A DNA stretch of 63,971 bases, counting the filler, from Octopus bimaculoides (Eukaryota): the NCBI RefSeq assembly GCF_001194135.2. It is 3 parts of 3 records of this genome, joined end to end, with 100 filler letters (N's around TTAATTAATTAA, not from the genome) between each part and the next. Parts side by side here need not be neighbours in the genome. Positions count along the whole stretch, not along the records: positions 1 to 18,951 come from NC_068992.1; 2 more parts are not named here. The stretch is one strand, 5' to 3'. The notes beneath the pieces are model-generated. The model was not told the origin of the DNA, ran no database searches, and saw only the letters and a program-made list of their open reading frames with translations. This document shows, one piece after another, positions 925 to 18,069 of the stretch. Every line of letters begins with the position of its first letter. The stretch's first letter is position 1. The translations under genes and the position numbers were made by a program.

Positions 925-3900
925 CCACTATACCCATCCTACCCGGTAACTTTCGAAATCCTGCTGACTCCCTACTAGGATGGTCATGTCATTTAAGAGC
1001 TGTGAGCTATAGAGCCAAGCCACCATTACACCATCCGATAGTATTACGAGACAGTAAACATCCAAAAGCTTGAAGAGTTAGGGTGCAGAGTTAGGGAAAT
1101 ATCCACCCTTTGTACTATCTGAGTCTCCTTGTCCATCAGAATGGCTTTACCATCATCATTGAATGAAGAATCATCGATAGAGTCCTTCTGTACTTATCTA
1201 GATCTCATAACTGCAAATTGTATTCCAAAGAGAGACCACAAATACTGCACCACCAGCCAGTTTACTTCAATAAGAAGAATGAACGAACTTATTGTTACCA
1301 TCCTGTTAATGAACTTCAAACTACTGACAACTGACAATCCAAATGCACCACTAGAAAAACATCTTGCCTCAACCAACACACGTATCAGAAAACTCTTTCG
1401 TATCAAGCGCACATACATCGACAACACCAACTCCACCAGCGCCACACCCATCAACACATCTATCGCTACCACTACCTCTACCAATACTACTAAAGCTATC
1501 ACAATCCAATCTAGCCTGAAAAAGGAAGCTCAGACGACAAAAAAAGTCAACCACACAGACACCAAATTTCGTTCTAGTGAGGAGAGCCAACGAAGAATTT
1601 ATGGCCCTCATAGCACGTAATAAAGTTATTGAGTGTAAGGGTGCAATTTATGACACTATCACCAGAAACATTAATATTAGTGCACATAGCAGTAGGGTTG
1701 TACAAAAACATTAGAAAGCTTTTCCCCAATGACGTGGAAATCTTTAATGTAAAAGCTACCAGCAAACTTTTTAATAGGATTCCCAAAGAACCCCAACCAA
1801 ATACGGACGTCGGGCCAGACGCCCTCCAACAGCATCGGAAGAATAAGTAAGCCCGCGCTTCTTTCTCATGACTCTTTCTGGTCAGCATGTCTATTATTAG
1901 AGTAAGTTGTATAGACGTACATGACCTGGGGTCAGCCTGGAAGCAAAGTTTCTTGCTTAATAATCTTAAGTCCCTAGATTTAAATGCAGTAGCCTCCAGC
2001 GAAACCAGGTTGCTGACATGTGCACACTAGACTCCATTTTTTGATGATTTGGTAATGTACACAACTCTGACTCAATCTAAAATGGGAGATTGGGTGACAA
2101 TGCTGTTTAGGAAACGACTGGATCTCAAGGTACGGACGATCTTCCTGGGCGGAGATGGTAAGTTAGTGGTCTTGGATATGAGGAACAGTAAAGGGGTGCT
2201 TTTATACTAGTCTTTGTGCACACCTCGTCTGGCGTGAAGCCGCCGGATTTCTTCAGACGTGTGGCGGTTTTCTTTGGAACATCTAGCTCCTTAGTGTTAA
2301 TGTGTGATTGGAACGCTATTTTGGACGCATACCTGGATTGTGTGGTGCTAGATGATTGGAGGGAAGTGCAAAAGTGTCACAAACCTCCCCAGGTTTTCCA
2401 ACGGGTTAACAGGGACCGACCGTCTGAACTTTCCAACGCATTATTTGGACAGAATCCGGTCTTCAATATGACATCTAGAGAGAGGCAAGCCTGTAGACCT
2501 ACAGTTAGAAGTAGCATTGAGTTGTCCATAGTTAAATGTCATCGACTACACAGACCACAAACGGTCTGAACGGTCGAAGTAGATACGATCCATAAGCAGG
2601 GGCCCGAGTAATGGACGTTGCATGCGCCTTTCATGGTGCGTCAAGATTTTAGTAAGTTAGTCCATCGGAAGTTGTCAGGTGCAATCGTCAACAACCGATG
2701 CTGAAGAGCCCTAAGAAGGACTGATACAGAGGAAGCGCCAAATGTGAAGAAATAGCATCAGTGGAATCTAGAATAGAGGGGAAACCTAGTTAGAAAGCTA
2801 GAAGTGACACTTAGCAGAGGCATTGTGACAGACATGCAGTCGGTGAGTTTGGTTCTTGATCATTCTTTCAATGCCGAACTCAATGGTTGCGCTGTCAGAG
2901 CTAGGGCTCATGATCTAAGAAATTAAGGAATGAAAGCCATTCGGTGAACTCGGGTGGCAGAGGCGCAACTTAGCAAAAAAGGGCTCATACTACATACATC
3001 CGAACAGACCATTGCGGAATTTCAGCAGCTCTTTGCCGACCTGTATGAAACGCGCATTCGGTCGGAGACGAAGGTGGGCTCCACTTCCTAACTCGATGGC
3101 ACTCCGTGCCTTTCCGCCAGAGATGCCGGGTTCTGTGAAATGCCGATAGCAGTCAAAGACATGGGGGACGATGAGTAGCTGCACAAGAGAGAAGTCTCTA
3201 GGACAGTATAATCTACCTTTCGAAATTTATTCTCAGTTATATTCGGTGTTTGGTTCGATGATATCTACAGCAAGGAGAAGTAGAACGGGGGAATTTCCAG
3301 TGCTGTAAGACGCGGCGTAGTGGTGCTGCTTAGTTAGGACCCGAATAAGGGGACCAGAGAGATATTTTTAGTCTCGTAATCCTGCTAAAATACAGATTAC
3401 AAGATTTTGGCCAAGATGTTAGACAAAAGGTGGCACTTGTCGTTGATACACTCATCGACGAAACACTAACCCAAACAGATCTATCCACGAGAAGCTACCA
3501 CTTACGAGATATAATATAGAGAGAATAGATAAGGAACCTGAAATGGATGGGGCTCTGATAAATTTGGTTCAATTAAAAGCTTTTGATAAGGTCGATCACC
3601 AAAACTTAGAGGCTTTACGTTCTGGCTCTCGACTCATTGCTACGAAGCTGGATGCTTCGAGGAGCATCCCGCGTGAACTAAGATGCAGAAGGTTCGTGTC
3701 ACTTTATGGGGACGGTGACACTTTAATAGTGTGGGATATCTTGAAAATGGAGGTGATGAACACTGTTCTAATCGAGTATGAAGCGTTGACAGCAGCAAAA
3801 TTTAAACAGAAGCCGGTAGGCCTGTATCTCGGTACCTAAAGAGGGATATCCTTGCCACCCGACAGCGTCGTAAGGCGCTGGACGGAAGGACCCGTTAAAT

Positions 3901-4025
3901 TACTCGGGATCTGGTTTGGTCTACATCTACAAGTTGACAAGAAGTGGTGAGGAGTAAGTAGGTGGGCAAGAGCGACAGCATCCTCGAAGAGATTAGGCAT
4001 CGCGAATGTTATAACGTCATAATGA
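925..4025 (+). pseudogene. Decayed L1/Tx1-like LINE: ORF1 remnant, APE endonuclease, RT; 3'-truncated
   Basis: Broken-frame motifs: ETR (~2001), CDWNAILD (GDFN-like, ~2303), KSLGQYNLPFEIY (KSPGxDG-like, ~3192), TDYKILAKMLDKR (~3385), KAFDKVDH (~3577), YGDGD (YADD-like, ~3705); many stops and frameshifts. Confidence 0.8.
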
Positions 4026-4029
4026 AATT

Positions 4030-4390
4030 ATACCCAGTTGAGATGAGAAAGACAGGGGCATGAAATTAAAGGTATTGAGTGAAAACCATAGTTGTTATAT
4101 ATGTCGTAATGATAACAACTATAAAGTCTCTGACACTGAAGAACCAGAGTCACCACGTCAGAGAAAGAGAAAGGAAAACAACAGACATCAGCCGAGATAA
4201 GAACCCAGTTTTCAGAAAACCCTCTATCACAGCACCGGCAGTGAAGATGATAATCTCCTGGTAGTCAATCCTAGAAACAAACGAGCAGATATCTCGTCTC
4301 CTATCAGTAGTAACTAGTTAGTGCACTTCATTGTTTTGCGACAAGGAAGACATAATATTTGCAGAGGAATGTGTACAAGATGCTCCTCGA
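4030..4390 (+). mobile_element. Possible second ORF1-like LINE remnant
   Basis: One frame reads SCYICRND...SDTEEPESPRQRKRK, resembling a knuckle region followed by a low-complexity tail; stops present. Confidence 0.3.
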
Positions 4391-5050: not shown

Positions 5051-5874
5051 CTCTGTATATANNNNNNNNNNNNNNNNNNNNNNNNNNNNNNNNNNNNNNN
5101 NNTATAATTTAGATTCAAGGTGAATACGGTACTTAAAAATTAAGTATAGTATTATCCATTCAATTCCAAAATAAGGTGATTAAAATCAAAATAAGCAACA
5201 AGGATATCCAAAGTTATTGCAGTACAATCGTTTCATGCGAATCCATTTATTTAAGCAATGTGAGCATTACATTAAATGTAAAATGCAGGGCAATCCTCAG
5301 CTGCACAAGGATATAGAAATTTATTGAAATTTCATTTCAACGGAAGGACATATTTTTGTAACTACATTTAAATTCTCCAAGTAGAAAGGAAGAATACAAA
5401 AAAAAAAACATTTTGACTTAGCCAGACCATACAGGCTAGTTATTAATTCTAAGCAGAATTTTAACTGTCACTGTTTTATTTGTTTTGTTTTTTTTGTTTT
5501 TGTTTTTTTTTTTCAGCTTATCAGACCTAGTGATTCAAAGCTTAAAAGGGCACCGGTATTTTCTTAATAGGGAAAGGAAAAGGGGTAAACAATATACATG
5601 GATGATTTGTTTGGGTTTAGTGACAAACTACAATAGGTTGGGAGGTTTTCTCTACTAGCAGAGCAGTTTATAATTATAAACTGGTCTGCCCTCTTAAGCT
5701 TTGAAATTTAACTTGTCCGTTTTCGTCCATTTATACATTGTTTAATCTTTTTCACCCCTTCTCTTGTCTTAGCCCATAAATCTTGATGAGGGTCCTGGTC
5801 TACATTTTTTAGAGCACATGTGTCTAATAAAGAAAAGATTATTATCAGAGTTGATGTTGTTGCCAATACTACTA

Positions 5875-11390: not shown

Positions 11391-12559
11391 NNNNNNNNNN
11401 NNNNNNNNNNNNNNNNNNNNNNNNNNNNNNNNNNNNNNNNNNNNNNNNNNNNNNNNNNNNNNNNNNNNNNNNNNNNNNNNNNNNNNNNNNNNNNNNNNNN
11501 NNNNNNNNNNNNNNNNNNNNNNNNNNNNNNNNNNNNNNNNNNNNNNNNNNNNNNNNNNNNNNNNNNNNNNNNNNNNNNNNNNNNNNNNNNNNNNNNNNNN
11601 NNNNNNNNNNNNNNNNNNNNNNNNNNNNNNNNNNNNNNNNNNNNNNNNNNNNNNNNNNNNNNNNNNNNNNNNNNNNNNNNNNNNNNNNNNNNNNNNNNNN
11701 NNNNNNNNNNNNNNNNNNNNNNNNNNNNNNNNNNNNNNNNNNNNNNNNNNNNNNNNNNNNNNNNNNNNNNNNNNNNNNNNNNNNNNNNNNNNNNNNNNNN
11801 NNNNNNNNNNNNNNNNNNNNNNNNNNNNNNNNNNNNNNNNNNNNNNNNNNNNNNNNNNNNNNNNNNNNNNNNNNNNNNNNNNNNNNNNNNNNNNNNNNNN
11901 NNNNNNNNNNNNNNNNNNNNNNNNNNNNNNNNNNNNNNNNNNNNNNNNNNNNNNNNNNNNNNNNNNNNNNNNNNNNNNNNNNNNNNNNNNNNNNNNNNNN
12001 NNNNNNNNNNNNNNNNNNNNNNNNNNNNNNNNNNNNNNNNNNNNNNNNNNNNNNNNNNNNNNNNNNNNNNNNNNATATATATATATATATAAATATATTA
12101 TGTACAATTTATTAATTATTATTTAATTGAAGGCGACGCATCCATTTCCAAGTAAATTTATCTTCACCTTTTTGATGCCACTCTGTACTCTATACTATTT
12201 TCTTCCTCCATCCTTCTCTAATTCCCATTTCTCTCTCTCTCTCTACACTTCTTTCTCTGTTTTTTTCTCTCTCTTTCTCGTTGCTCACACGTGACCATCG
12301 TCCATCTTTCTTTTCCTCACGTGACCATTTTTCATTTCCCCGGACGTTTAAACGAACGCACGTGTTTTTCTCTCTCTCTTATATTTTTCTCTCTCTTATA
12401 TTTTTTCTCTCTCTCTTATATTTTTTTCTCTTTTCAAAAATGTGTTTCTCCCAGCGTTCACTATTTTCCTCCCGTTCGGGTCTAACGACCCTCCATCTTT
12501 GTTTTCGTTCGGTTTCCTTGTCTGTCTCCATTGTCAGATTTATGTTCTCAACTTTGATA

Positions 12560-13240: not shown

Positions 13241-14206
13241 TCGTTATATATATATATATATNNNNNNNNNNNNNNNNNNNNNNNNNNNNNNNNNNNNNNN
13301 NNNNNNNNNNNNNNNNNNNNNNNNNNNNNNNNNNNNNNNNNNNNNNNNNNNNNNNNNNNNNNNNNNNNNNNNNNNNNNNNNNNNNNNNNNNNNNNNNNNN
13401 NNNNNNNNNNNNNNNNNNNNNNNNNNNNNNNNNNNNNNNNNNNNNNNNNNNNNNNNNNNNNNNNNNNNNNNNNNNNNNNNNNNNNNNNNNNNNNNNNNNN
13501 NNNNNNNNNNNNNNNNNNNNNNNNNNNNNNNNNNNNNNNNNNNNNNNNNNNNNNNNNNNNNNNNNNNNNNNNNNNNNNNNNNNNNNNNNNNNNNNNNNNN
13601 NNNNNNNNNNNNNNNNNNNNNNNNNNNNNNNNNNNNNNNNNNNNNNNNNNNNNNNNNNNNNNNNNNNNNNNNNNNNNNNNNNNNNNNNNNNNNNNNNNNN
13701 NNNNNNNNNNNNNNNNNNNNNNNNNNNNNNNNNNNNNNNNNNNNNNNNNNNNNNNNNNNNNNNNNNNNNNNNNNNNNNNNNNNNNNNNNNNNNNNNNNNN
13801 NNNNNNNNNNNNNNNNNNNNNNNNNNNNNNNNNNNNNNNNNNNNNNNNNNNNNNNNNNNNNNNNNNNNNNNNNNNNNNNNNNNNNNNNNNNNNNNNNNNN
13901 NNNNNNNNNNNNNNNNNNNNNNNNNNNNNNNNNNNNNNNNNNNNNNNNNNNNNNNNNNNNNNNNNNNNNNNNNNNNNNNNNNNNNNNNNNNNNNNNNNNN
14001 NNNNNNNNNNNNNNNNNNNNNNNNNNNNNNNNNNNNNNNNNNNNNNNNNNNNNNNNNNNNNNNNNNNNNNNNNNNNNNNNNNNNNNNNNNNNNNNNNNNN
14101 NNNNNNNNNNNNNNNNNNNNNNNNNNNNNNNNNNNNNNNNNNNNNNNNNNNNNNNNNNNNNNNNNNNNNNNNNNNNNNNNNNNNNNNNNNNNNNNNNNNN
14201 NNNNNN

Positions 14207-14609
14207 CTTCACTTTATCGTGCAGTTACTGTTAATACCTCGTTCAGAGATTTAACATTGCTTGTTTTCACTTTTTCGATATCAGTGAATAACTTCACTGG
14301 AAAAAGACTTATATTTTGCCAAGGGATTGTCCTTCTCATCGATGGTCGGCGATTATCGTACGCTGAAGAAGGGAAATAACCCTGAAACTCGGGTCCGTAC
14401 GTATCGCAGACCAAGATGGGAGGGATAACTTCCCTTGGCAAAAATAGACAGGACACAGATGTGTGTCGATAAGCCAGCTGCAGGAGATGTTCTCCTGGGG
14501 CTAAAAGCAACAGTAACATCCACCCTTAGGGGTCAGCCACATTTAAATGGCAAATATACTTCACTTTATCGTGCAGTTACTGTTAATAGCTCGTTCAGAG
14601 ATTTAACAT
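14207..14609 (+). mobile_element. 352-nt hammerhead-bearing repeat unit plus 51-nt partial second copy (retrozyme-like or Penelope pLTR monomer)
   Basis: Direct repeat 14207-14257 = 14559-14609 (1 mismatch), period 352; hammerhead inside; multiple hairpins; no meaningful ORF. Confidence 0.75.
14357..14401 (+). ncRNA. Minimal type-I hammerhead ribozyme, intact core; predicted cleavage after C14395
   Basis: CGTACG-CTGAAGA-AGGG-aaataa-CCCT-GAAA-C-tcgg-G-TC-CGTACG: helix I 6 bp, helix II 4 bp, helix III 2 bp, GUC triplet. Confidence 0.9.
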
Positions 14610-15099
14610 ATATATATATATCATTTATATTATATATACCCTCCTGGACTTAGTATTTATAAGGTCTTTTATATAAGTAACCCTTCTAATTAAATACCCC
14701 TAAGAAACTATAAATATCATGCATGGAGTAGCAATAATAACTTCTAAAACCTATAGTGTAACCCTTAGTTTTAAAACATTAGTATAAAATTAGAATGTCC
14801 CATAACATAAATATTCCCTTGGCTAATACCTGGTAACAGTCTTTATTTATATTAGCTAAATAAGTAAATATATAAGGTTTAGTTTAGTATATTTTGAATT
14901 ATTATACATTTTCTATAAATCTTCTGTATTGTAGTTAATAAACTACACATACTTTATCATGTTTTCAGTGATTAAGCTATTTTATTCCTTCTCAATGGTG
15001 ATCAGCCCTACCTGATTATTTTATTTCATTATTATTTTATAATAGCCTTTATTTATTTATTTATAAAATAAAACTAATTTTTGTACCTCTATAAATTCA

Positions 15100-15604
15100 T
15101 ACTTAGCTTATATATAACAATATTGGTATATTCACTACTTAAAATAAACTGCTTAGATTATAATTATGTTCTTTGTCCATCTCCTTAACTGCTTGGAGAT
15201 TTAAGGTAAAATTATGCTAATGTGTTTATCTGTTTTAATTAAATTAAATTCTATGTCTTTGTCCAGCTGAGGAATGCTTTGCATTTAAATTGATGAAATG
15301 GAGTTGCGTGGAACAATCGTACTGCATTACCTTTGGATATCCTTGTTGTTTATTTTGATTACATATATATACATATATATATTTCGTTTTTGGATTTGGT
15401 TTGCAAGTTTTTTTATGTGATTTCCTGTGTTGAAGCATATTCTGTTGTGTCTGGGGAGAGTCATTTTCTTATCGTGCCTTAAAATTTAACACACGCACCG
15501 TTAAAATTTCCACTTATTTCTTATTTTTATTTTTATAAAAATAAGAAATAAGTGGAAATTTTAACGGTGAGTGTGTTTAATTTTAAGGCACGATAAGAAA
15601 ATGA
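15100..15604 (+). mobile_element. pLTR-like repeat with a degenerate hammerhead core, ending in an inverted duplication
   Basis: CAG-CTGAGGA-ATGC...GCGT-GGAAC-aatc-GTA-CTG at 15264-15324; 70-bp palindrome arms at 15461-15604. Confidence 0.45.
15461..15604. repeat. Near-perfect palindrome, 70-bp arms, 4-nt TTTT loop
   Basis: 15461-15530 is the reverse complement of 15535-15604 with 2 mismatches; the right arm runs into an N gap. Confidence 0.9.
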
Positions 15605-16279
15605 NNNNNNNNNNNNNNNNNNNNNNNNNNNNNNNNNNNNNNNNNNNNNNNNATATATATATATATATATATATACATATATATATACAAAGGAGGGAGT
15701 GACAGAGATCATATTTACGTGAATGGATGATTCTAGATAAGGAACTGATATGTAAATGGATAAGGTAGAAATGTGTGCCTGTTACATATACAGATGCGGA
15801 TATGCAATAATGCATTTCGCCTTTGTCGGAGAATATATTTTTCAAGTCTATTTTCTCTCTGTATATTGTAGACATAAGCGATGCAGTTACTTTGTAATTT
15901 ACTACTATTTAATAAAGGGTTGTTGATAAGCAGATTACCCTCCACAGAATTTTTATATTTTCCATTAATGATGTACAAAGTATATTTGATTTATTTAGGC
16001 AAACAGAAATGCGTAAACCAACCGATGTATATGTATATATATATATCAGATGATGAAAACTCTTCCAAATTATGTGATGAACATATGTGTCACCCCTTCA
16101 TAAAAAATGGAAACGCTTTTCATATTTCTGAACAAATTTTTGTAGCTGACCTTCCGAAGTAAAATGGTACTACTGTGTTTATTTTCAATCTGATATTCAC
16201 TTCTTTATGCAGAGAGTATTCGACAAGCTTTTTCCATATGTTGCAAGTGTAATATCTAAAATTAAGTGTCCTGCTTTAC

Positions 16280-17679: not shown

Positions 17680-18069
17680 NNNNNNNNNNNNNNNNNNNNN
17701 NNNNNNNNNNNNNNNNNNNNNNNNNNNNNNNNNNNNNNNNNNNNNNNNNNNNNNNNNNNNNNNNNNNNNNNNNNNNNNNNNNNNNNNNNNNNNNNNNNNN
17801 NNNNNNNNNNNNNNNNNNATATTTACATGTGTGTCTATGTGTGAGTGAGTGTAGTATTTGTATATAATTCCTAATTCACCTTAACGATATATTAGTTTAT
17901 TCACGGGCTTTATTTACTGAATTTGATTATGAAAAACCATTTAAAAATTGAATCAGGAAACTGGAAATAAATGTTAATCAATGTTTCAGATTTATCCTCC
18001 CCTTTTGCATTTTAAATTTCAATTTTGAGTAACTCGTCCTCGACAGTTTCCTAGTTCTTGTTTTACTAG

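What the first reader, a model, noticed from the sequence alone, without database searches (positions are those of the whole stretch)
14207..14609. 352-nt retrozyme-like unit with an intact hammerhead ribozyme: candidate octopus self-cleaving / circular RNA element
Seen: a 51-bp direct repeat (14207-14257 / 14559-14609, 1 mismatch) sets a 352-nt period. Inside lies a complete type-I hammerhead (CUGAAGA core, 4-bp helix II, GAAA, 2-bp helix III, GUC cleavage triplet at 14393-14395), and there is no coding potential. Established: non-LTR retrozymes and Penelope pLTRs are tandem units of a few hundred nt with one minimal type-I hammerhead per unit; cleavage at consecutive ribozymes releases monomers that can circularise. 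Inference: this is such a monomer plus the start of the next one, and the 945-N gap directly upstream may hide more copies. I cannot tell whether this family has been described in cephalopods.
Basis: partly seen in the sequence, partly recalled or inferred. Interest (0 to 1): 0.9.

Follow-up and report, generated by a model that had tools for sequence, protein, structure and literature searches.

The report
Hammerhead-ribozyme tandem repeat (animal retrozyme)
This is one copy of a very abundant, non-coding, roughly 352-base repeat that carries a self-cutting "hammerhead" RNA motif, the same kind of element (a retrozyme) already known from mussels, corals and salamanders, so it is real but a new example of a known thing.

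Summary
A 51-nt direct repeat (14207-14257 / 14559-14609, 1 mismatch) sets a 352-nt period, and a complete type-I hammerhead lies at 14357-14401 with its cut site at 14395|14396. A descriptor scan finds this one motif and none in 300 random sequences. Rfam's only hit is Hammerhead_1, full length but below threshold (16.1 bits against 34).

Raw reads show a family of about 10^4 ribozyme modules in the source genome. All three unit junctions are continuous in most reads, and about 79% of reads run past the point where the window copy stops, so the family is head-to-tail tandem. A minority of copies end at the same spot in TA-rich DNA. Helices I and III vary in a compensating way, and helix III stays palindromic.

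As a circle the unit folds at z = -10.8, has 43% G+C and no conserved ORF. It fits the metazoan non-LTR retrozyme definition and is probably mobilised by Penelope-like elements.

Self-cleavage and circles are not shown. RNA sits at background level with no ends at the cut site, and about 78% of family copies carry C at core position U4. The window copy belongs to a canonical-core subtype of roughly 700-900 copies.

Verdict: new member of a known kind, moderate interest.

The parts
13245..13261 (.). (TA)n microsatellite on the upstream side of the gap; probable upstream edge of the insertion site
   Evidence: Sequence
13262..14206 (.). 945-N assembly gap abutting the element. It could hold up to about 2.7 further units, which is not testable here
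   Evidence: The family is mostly tandem, so a collapsed array is plausible
14207..14257 (+). Module A(1-51), first copy of the 51-nt direct repeat; here it runs on into the rest of the unit
14207..14558 (+). One full 352-nt period (modules A 14207-14304, B 14305-14448, C 14449-14558)
   Evidence: Modules defined by read-depth steps and junction reads
14314..14443 (+). Rod: inverted repeat 14314-14353 / 14403-14443 (81% over 42 nt) that extends helix I of the hammerhead into a hairpin of about 50 bp
14349..14407 (+). Type-I hammerhead ribozyme including distal helix I
14363..14369 (+). Core CUGAAGA (C3-A9). U4 = 14364 is T in the window copy
   Evidence: Family: 14364 is C in 78% of reads at >=80% likeness but in <3% among reads >=94% like the window
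14370..14383 (+). Helix II AGGG/CCCU with loop AAAUAA (the 10.1-11.1 pair is A-U, not the usual G-C)
   Evidence: Only variant listed at >=4% of DNA reads: none in DNA (14383 T>A is about 2%)
14384..14395 (+). GAAA, helix III plus loop (ACUCGGGU, near-palindrome) and C17; cut between 14395 and 14396
14449..14558 (+). Module C, the most abundant and most conserved part of the family (about 4x10^4 copies); holds hairpins GGAGGAnnnnUCCUCC and GCCACnnnnnnGUGGC in the family consensus; candidate RT-recognition region (inference)
14559..14609 (+). Second copy of A(1-51); ends at the family's recurrent 3' terminus
   Evidence: Other copies end at positions equivalent to 14257-14262 next to (TA)n or TA-rich DNA (RNA loose ends; contig loose ends)
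14610..14621 (.). (AT)6, downstream edge of the insertion site

Best explanation
The stretch is the 3' end of a short head-to-tail array of a non-autonomous, non-coding retroelement of the metazoan 'non-LTR retrozyme' kind. Each 352-nt unit carries one canonical metazoan type-I hammerhead. [quoted passage not shown] The window copy has an intact core and belongs to a canonical-core subtype of several hundred copies. The bulk of the family carries U4 to C and has probably lost cleavage.
For: The motif is not chance: 1 hit against 0 in 300 random sequences, and Rfam's only hit is Hammerhead_1 over its full length. Family size: DNA depth is about 7,500 over the ribozyme and about 31,000 over module C, against about 0.7-0.9 in the unique flank. 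Tandem order: at 14609, 4,566 of about 5,800 reads in X23 (79%), 83% in X24 and 75-77% of RNA reads continue with TGCTTGTTTTCAC..., which is window 14258 onward. B-to-C is continuous in 3,152 of about 4,700 reads. A-to-B has 2,014 reads running into a diverged B arm. C-to-A has more than 1,500 joint reads reaching at least 71 nt into A. A 347-nt contig in run X19 is a circular permutation of one unit. Selection on the ribozyme fold: the core (except U4 and N7), helix II and GAAA show no DNA variant at >=4%. Helix III types AUCCGGAU and ACCCGGGU are read directly from read and contig consensus sequences. Type ACUCGAGU is inferred from the single-site change 14392 G>A, which reaches about 90% of depth in three other species. 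All three are palindromes that keep the pairs. 14388 C>T at 62.6% matches 14393 G>A at 63.0%. In helix I, 14359 is A 63% / G 26% / T 11% against 14399 T 81% / A 19%. Distal pairs 14352/14404 and 14353/14403 change together from A-U and U-A to G-C and C-G. RNA fold of the unit as a circle: -134.2 kcal/mol against -80.8 +/- 4.9 for shuffles, z = -10.8, 43% G+C. Two copies form an 8-bp intermolecular helix III. The architecture (helix I 6 bp, helix II 4 bp, helix III 2 bp plus a 4-nt loop) is the 'canonical metazoan' type as defined in PMC4209133. Unit size, G+C, tandem order and self-pairing match non-LTR retrozymes, including mussel repeats of 350-390 bp with about 5,000 hammerheads (PMC7229834). 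TA microsatellites flank both sides, and other copies end at the same point. Penelope-like elements prefer microsatellite targets and form partial tandems (PMC8557442), and their RT starts internally on the RNA (PMC11167929).
Against: There is no direct evidence of cleavage or circles. In three RNA-seq runs there is no pile-up of read ends and no dip in depth at 14395/14396, although depth there is only about 40-120. The RNA/DNA depth ratio is about 0.01-0.03 in all modules and in the canonical-core subtype, which is background-like. These libraries may be poly(A)-selected and would then miss circles. 78% of family ribozymes carry C at U4, one of the conserved core positions. So most copies spread, or persist, without a canonical core. 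Rfam's score is below the gathering threshold. The 10.1-11.1 pair is A-U, and the window's helix III has two G.U pairs in the dimer. Helix I covariation is inferred from matching frequencies, not from haplotypes. No full-length second copy could be fetched. No Penelope RT was examined, so the partner is inferred.
Confidence: 0.72

Rival explanations
1. It is a Penelope-dependent tandem 'SINE-like' element in which the hammerhead is a relic. Linear multimeric read-through RNA is the template, the RT starts internally, and neither cleavage nor circles play a part.
For: 78% of copies have U4 to C yet form the largest subfamily. No RNA ends at the cut site and RNA is at background level. For an anole Penelope element, ribozyme cleavage was not needed for insertion in vitro and no RNA-seq reads ended at the cut site (PMC11167929). 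Naiad elements proliferate without hammerheads (PMC8557442).
Against: Except for U4 and N7, every core position, helix II and the helix III palindrome are kept across about 10^4 copies, with compensating changes. A canonical-core subtype of about 700-900 copies persists and is the listed form in three other species. That points to continuing selection on the fold, at least in master copies.
Confidence: 0.22
2. It is a solo pseudo-LTR, or terminal fragment, of an autonomous Penelope-like element rather than an independent short element.
For: Partial-tandem structure, TA-microsatellite target and a hammerhead are all Penelope hallmarks (PMC8557442, PMC4209133). Retrozymes are reported to be related to pLTRs (bioRxiv 10.64898/2026.07.22.740005). 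The gap hides what lies upstream.
Against: The read census closes the unit on itself: A-to-B, B-to-C and C-to-A are each the majority continuation, and no recurrent exit into other sequence appears among the best-supported loose ends. At 945 N the gap is too short for an ORF of about 3 kb. The upstream ORFs give no Pfam hit. The ribozyme has the canonical architecture, not the Penelope min-HHR (helix II 7-8 bp, helix I 4-5 bp; PMC4209133).
Confidence: 0.05
3. It is classical satellite DNA amplified by unequal crossing-over, with a hammerhead by descent, and was not retrotransposed.
For: Tandem order and high copy number. Newt satellite 2 was first described in this way.
Against: About 20-25% of A(1-51) copies terminate at one recurrent point next to varied TA-rich flanks. 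That implies many short dispersed arrays with a defined 3' end. The window locus is such a short insertion between two TA tracts.
Confidence: 0.04
4. It is a chance match to the hammerhead consensus inside an unrelated repeat.
For: Rfam is below its gathering score.
Against: 0 hits in 300 random sequences. The core is conserved and the helices change in compensating ways across thousands of copies and several species.
Confidence: 0.01

Closest known systems
Non-LTR retrozymes of invertebrates, especially the Mytilus galloprovincialis repeats (Cervera & de la Pena 2020, PMC7229834)
   Same: Head-to-tail repeats of a few hundred bp (mussel 350-390 bp; here 352). One type-I hammerhead per unit. 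G+C below 45% (here 43%). No ORF. Strongly self-paired predicted RNA. Thousands of copies (mussel about 5,000 hammerheads; here about 10^4). Loop 1 / loop 2 contacts are not obviously archetypal in either.
   Different: No shared sequence was tested. Circular RNA is shown in mussel and not here. Here most copies have U4 to C. Here a recurrent 3' terminus in TA-rich DNA is visible.
Amphibian satellite-2 / axolotl retrozymes Rtz_331 and Rtz_353 (PMC7229834)
   Same: Period of 330-350 bp. Helix III of 1-2 bp capped by a palindromic tetraloop, so the ribozyme is expected to act as a dimer of neighbouring units.
   Different: Vertebrate elements with about 120,000 copies. Self-cleavage as dimers and circles were shown experimentally there.
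Schistosoma Sm-alpha hammerhead repeat
   Same: Repeat of about 335 nt with a type-I hammerhead, both tandem and dispersed (my own knowledge; cited in PMC6155905).
   Different: Sm-alpha has a stable G10.1-C11.1 helix II and well-defined loop-loop contacts, and it cleaves very fast.
Penelope-like element pLTR hammerheads (min-HHR; PMC4209133)
   Same: Type-I topology, palindromic helix III positions, partial tandems, microsatellite targets.
   Different: The min-HHR has helix II of 7-8 bp, helix I of 4-5 bp and an extra unpaired base before helix II, and it sits next to an RT/GIY-YIG ORF. None of these holds here.

Membership tests
Hammerhead ribozyme, type I (Rfam RF00163) | Conserved core C3 U4 G5 A6 N7 G8 A9, G12 A13 A14, A15.1-U16.1, H17 | tested here: met
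   All present in the window copy at 14363-14369, 14384-14387 and 14394-14395
Hammerhead ribozyme, type I (Rfam RF00163) | Three helices around the core, with helix I open-ended | tested here: met
   Helix I 6 bp plus 5 bp distal, helix II 4 bp, helix III 2 bp plus tetraloop
Hammerhead ribozyme, type I (Rfam RF00163) | Score at or above Rfam's gathering threshold | tested here: not met
   16.1 bits against 34; E = 0.092 on 67 nt; no hit in larger searches. It is the only family matched, and the match is full length.
Hammerhead ribozyme, type I (Rfam RF00163) | Helices kept by compensating changes among relatives | tested here: met
   Helix III: AUCCGGAU and ACCCGGGU are seen within single read or contig consensus sequences, and ACUCGAGU is inferred from 14392 G>A. 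Helix I: matched variant frequencies only, not haplotypes.
Hammerhead ribozyme, type I (Rfam RF00163) | Site-specific self-cleavage | not testable with these tools
   RNA-seq shows no end pile-up at 14395/14396, at low depth
Metazoan non-LTR retrozyme (PMC7229834) | Head-to-tail repeats of about 150-450 bp | tested here: met
   Period 352 in the window. 75-83% of family reads continue across the unit junction.
Metazoan non-LTR retrozyme (PMC7229834) | One canonical type-I hammerhead per unit | tested here: met
   The architecture matches the 'canonical metazoan' definition in PMC4209133.
Metazoan non-LTR retrozyme (PMC7229834) | Low G+C (<45%), no coding capacity, no LTR/PBS/PPT | tested here: met
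   43% G+C. The only ORF has no homologue, and frame-breaking indels are common in the family.
Metazoan non-LTR retrozyme (PMC7229834) | Highly self-paired monomer RNA | tested here: met
   Circular MFE -134.2 kcal/mol, z = -10.8, 66% of bases paired
Metazoan non-LTR retrozyme (PMC7229834) | Abundant linear and circular monomer RNA in tissues | tested here: inconclusive
   RNA is present but the RNA/DNA depth ratio is about 0.01-0.03. Library selection is unknown. A circle junction cannot be told apart from a tandem junction.
Metazoan non-LTR retrozyme (PMC7229834) | Co-existence with autonomous Penelope-like elements | not tested
   Reported for Octopus vulgaris (PMC13282606), but the source organism is coded here
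Penelope-like element pLTR | Flanks an RT / GIY-YIG ORF | tested here: not met
   No Pfam hit in the window ORFs. The gap is too short. The family junction census shows no recurrent exit from the unit.
Penelope-like element pLTR | Minimal hammerhead (long helix II, short helix I, extra base before helix II) | tested here: not met
   Helix II 4 bp, helix I 6 bp, no extra base (PMC4209133)
tRNA-derived SINE | tRNA-like head with pol III boxes | tested here: not met
   ARAGORN finds no tRNA in the window. Rfam finds no tRNA, 5S or 7SL.

The most novel reading that the evidence does not exclude
The family, tens of thousands of rod-like units whose transcripts carry an A-to-I editing signature, could be more than a genomic parasite. 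It might be a cephalopod-scale source of double-stranded or circular RNA that competes for ADAR. The U4-to-C switch might be an 'off' state of the ribozyme that allowed the burst of amplification, meaning ribozyme loss favoured spread.
Probability: 0.07. Interest if true: 0.7.

Novelty: new member of a known kind. Interest (0 to 1): 0.35.

Why it matters
If confirmed at the bench, it would extend ribozyme-made circular RNAs (retrozymes) to the lineage that holds this genome. The searchable literature describes no hammerhead repeat in cephalopods. The family also gives a natural comparison of about 2,000 canonical-core copies with about 7,000 U4-to-C copies. That comparison could show whether self-cleavage helps or hinders spread. 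Its fixed 3' end in TA-rich DNA fits the internal-initiation model for Penelope reverse transcriptase. For annotation, it explains one high-copy 'unclassified' repeat and probably an assembly gap.

Tried and rejected
(1) Rfam at gathering score and at E<=10 on 444 nt found no hammerhead; only the 67-nt search gave a sub-threshold hit. (2) Fetching other copies as sequence failed every way I tried. The protein search with the 101-aa ORF as a handle gave nothing. Exact-ORF look-ups gave nothing. Two metagenome scans and one viral scan with ribozyme and module-C patterns gave nothing. No PacBio run was listed. So no alignment, covariance model or R-scape-type test could be made, and covariation rests on read-level frequencies and loose-end consensus sequences. 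(3) No other copy lies in the window. (4) Penelope RT in the window: the ORFs at 1129-4261 look faintly RT-like by eye but have no Pfam hit. (5) tRNA-SINE head: none. (6) I first read the many 'opposite strands' joints and the palindrome AGGTTCGTCCATCGATCGATGGACGAACCT in DNA runs X23/X24 as Penelope-like inverted copies. I rejected this because the palindrome appears at many unrelated breakpoints, only in those two 'GENOMIC OTHER' libraries, and not in other DNA runs or in RNA. It is most likely a library linker. (7) CpG decay as the source of T at 14364: rejected, because the mirror change G>A at 14365 is below 4%.

Full report
OBSERVATION. The 51-nt direct repeat is real: 14207-14257 and 14559-14609, one mismatch, spacing 352. 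The first copy begins at the first base after a 945-N gap (13262-14206). The second copy is followed at once by (AT)6, and a (TA)n tract also lies just before the gap.

Helix I is CGUACG/CGUACG (14357-14362 / 14396-14401), and it continues after a small internal loop as GCGAU/AUCGC (14349-14353 / 14403-14407). The core is CUGAAGA (14363-14369). Helix II is AGGG/CCCU with loop AAAUAA. GAAA follows, then a 2-bp helix III with loop UCGG, and GUC with the cut after 14395.

A descriptor scan of my own finds only this site in the window on both strands and none in 300 random sequences of the same size and composition. Rfam is silent at gathering score and at E<=10 on 444 nt. When given only the 67-nt ribozyme, its single hit is Hammerhead_1, aligned over the full model in the same register, at 16.1 bits against a threshold of 34. 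The 101-aa minus-strand ORF that overlaps the unit has no homologue.

THE FAMILY. No other copy lies in the window, and no public contig with a copy could be fetched. So I used public sequencing runs of the same, coded, organism.

In about 1.9 Gb of sampled genomic reads the unique flank has a depth of about 0.7-0.9. The ribozyme region reaches about 7,500 and module C (14449-14558) about 31,000, for reads at least 80% alike. That means roughly 10^4 ribozyme modules and about 4x10^4 C modules. Reads at least 94% like the window's ribozyme still give a depth of 500-650, or some 700-900 close relatives. The family also occurs in runs of at least three other coded species and in a run labelled 'cetacean metagenome'.

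TANDEM ORDER AND ENDS. I laid reads on a reference that stops at 14609 plus flank. 79% (X23) and 83% (X24) of genomic reads, and 75-77% of RNA reads that reach 14609, carry on with TGCTTGTTTTCAC..., the sequence that follows the first repeat copy at 14258. B-to-C and A-to-B are likewise the majority continuations. More than 1,500 reads join C to A and run at least 71 nt into A. A unit whose three junctions are all continuous in most reads must lie head to tail. One 347-nt contig is a circular permutation of a unit.

The remaining fifth or so of A(1-51) copies stop at positions equivalent to 14257-14262 and are followed by (TA)n or TA-rich DNA. The window copy stops in the same way. So the second 51-nt copy marks the family's recurrent 3' end rather than a random truncation.

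SELECTION ON THE RIBOZYME. Among about 7,500x of genomic reads, no DNA variant reaches 4% at C3, G5, A6, G8, A9, helix II and its loop, GAAA or U16.1.

Helix III varies, but as palindromes. AUCCGGAU and ACCCGGGU are read directly from consensus sequences of read and contig ends. ACUCGAGU is inferred from 14392 G>A, which reaches about 90% of depth in the three other species. 14388 C>T at 62.6% mirrors 14393 G>A at 63.0%. The window's ACUCGGGU is one step from either of the last two palindromes and still gives an 8-bp intermolecular helix with two G.U pairs.

In helix I, 14359 is A, G or T (63, 26 and 11%) against 14399 T or A (81 and 19%). Two distal pairs switch together from A-U and U-A to G-C and C-G. 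These helix I data are matching frequencies, not haplotypes.

The one discordant fact is that U4 (14364) is C in 78% of reads. This is not CpG decay of a CCGA master, because the mirror change at 14365 is below 4%. It is a subfamily difference. U4 belongs to the conserved catalytic centre (PMC6155905), and from my own knowledge of the classical mutagenesis, U4 substitutions strongly reduce cleavage. Reads close to the window do not carry the change (<3%).

RNA. As a 352-nt circle the unit folds at -134.2 kcal/mol against -80.8 +/- 4.9 for dinucleotide shuffles (z = -10.8). A rod of about 50 bp extends helix I, and the three-way junction stays in place. G+C is 43%.

RNA-seq reads of three runs cover the family on both orientations. 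Their RNA/DNA depth ratio is about 0.01-0.03 in every module and in the canonical subtype. There is no excess of read ends and no dip in depth at 14395/14396. This gives no support for cleavage. It does not exclude it either, because depth is low, the library selection is unknown, and religated circles would read through the site. A circle junction is identical to a tandem junction, so it cannot be scored.

WHAT IT IS. The ribozyme has the 'canonical metazoan' architecture: helix I 6 bp, helix II 4 bp, helix III 1-2 bp with a small palindromic loop. That type is expected to act as a dimer of neighbouring units (PMC4209133). It is not the Penelope min-HHR.

Unit length, tandem order, low G+C, lack of an ORF and strong self-pairing are the stated features of metazoan non-LTR retrozymes. 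The mussel repeats (350-390 bp, about 5,000 hammerheads) are the nearest described case (PMC7229834).

The TA-tract flanks, the partial tandem and the fixed 3' end fit mobilisation by a Penelope-like element. Those elements prefer microsatellites and form partial tandems (PMC8557442), and their RT starts at internal sites of the RNA (PMC11167929). A 2026 preprint argues that animal retrozymes derive from Penelope pLTRs (10.64898/2026.07.22.740005).

I could not examine a Penelope element of this species. A solo pLTR is unlikely, because the read census closes the unit on itself and the gap is too short for an ORF. No tRNA-like head exists.

MECHANISM AND DOUBT. I commit to the retrozyme cycle: multimeric RNA, dimeric hammerhead cleavage, ligation to circles, then reverse transcription by a Penelope-type RT from a fixed internal start into TA-rich DNA. 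Only the first step (junction-spanning RNA) and the genomic footprints of the last step are shown here.

The main rival keeps the same element and partner but makes the ribozyme dispensable. It is favoured by the success of the U4-to-C lineage and by the anole result that cleavage was not needed in vitro (PMC11167929). It is disfavoured by the tight conservation of the rest of the fold.

NOVELTY. Searches of the held literature for hammerhead or retrozyme together with octopus, cephalopod or mollusc found no description of such a family in cephalopods. A 2026 octopus repeat annotation does not mention ribozymes. However, retrozyme-like repeats are stated to be widespread 'from molluscs to arthropods' (PMC7229834). 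This is therefore a new member of a known kind. I could not verify that the source is an octopus.

Noticed in passing
window 14216-14280, 14398-14427, 14502-14545 (family-wide reads): RNA-only A>G and T>C changes. For example, 14227 A>G is 0.25% in DNA against 14.3% in RNA, 14236 is 0.21% against 11.7%, and 14502 T>C is 0.07% against 7.5% (Fisher tests). This is the signature of A-to-I editing of transcripts from both strands and implies the family's RNA is double-stranded in vivo. The alternative is that a few expressed loci carry G at those sites.
   Followed up: partly
window 14364 (U4 of the hammerhead), family-wide: 78% of family copies have C instead of the conserved U4, linked by frequency to helix III type AUCCGGAU and helix I CGAACG/CGUUCG. 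The largest subfamily therefore probably has a crippled ribozyme.
   Followed up: partly
DNA runs X23/X24, joined to many breakpoints across 14249-14606: The palindrome (CT)AGGTTCGTCCATCGA|TCGATGGACGAACCT(AG) is attached to reads at many unrelated positions. It appears only in these two 'GENOMIC OTHER' libraries and is absent from other DNA runs and from RNA. It is probably a proximity-ligation bridge linker, so 'opposite strands' joints in these runs should not be read as genome structure.
   Followed up: partly
run X19 ('cetacean metagenome'), contig of 347 nt laid on 14496-14558 then 14207-14490: A near-complete circular permutation of one unit turns up in a whale-associated sample. This is consistent with DNA from prey of the source lineage.
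   Followed up: no
window 15461-15530 / 15535-15604: A 70-nt inverted repeat, 97% complementary, with a 4-nt spacer, lies directly before another N gap (15605-15652) (I6). It may be a foldback element or an assembly artefact.
   Followed up: no
window 5062-5102, 11391-12074, 13262-14206, 15605-15652, 17680-17818: There are five N gaps in 19 kb, mostly bordered by TA, CA or TC microsatellites. The assembly breaks at simple repeats and possibly at tandem elements like this one.
   Followed up: no
window 2216-3839 (+): Short ORFs with a faint reverse-transcriptase look (for example ...KAFDKVDH...) have no Pfam match at E<=0.01. They are probably a decayed retroelement unrelated to the finding.
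   Followed up: partly
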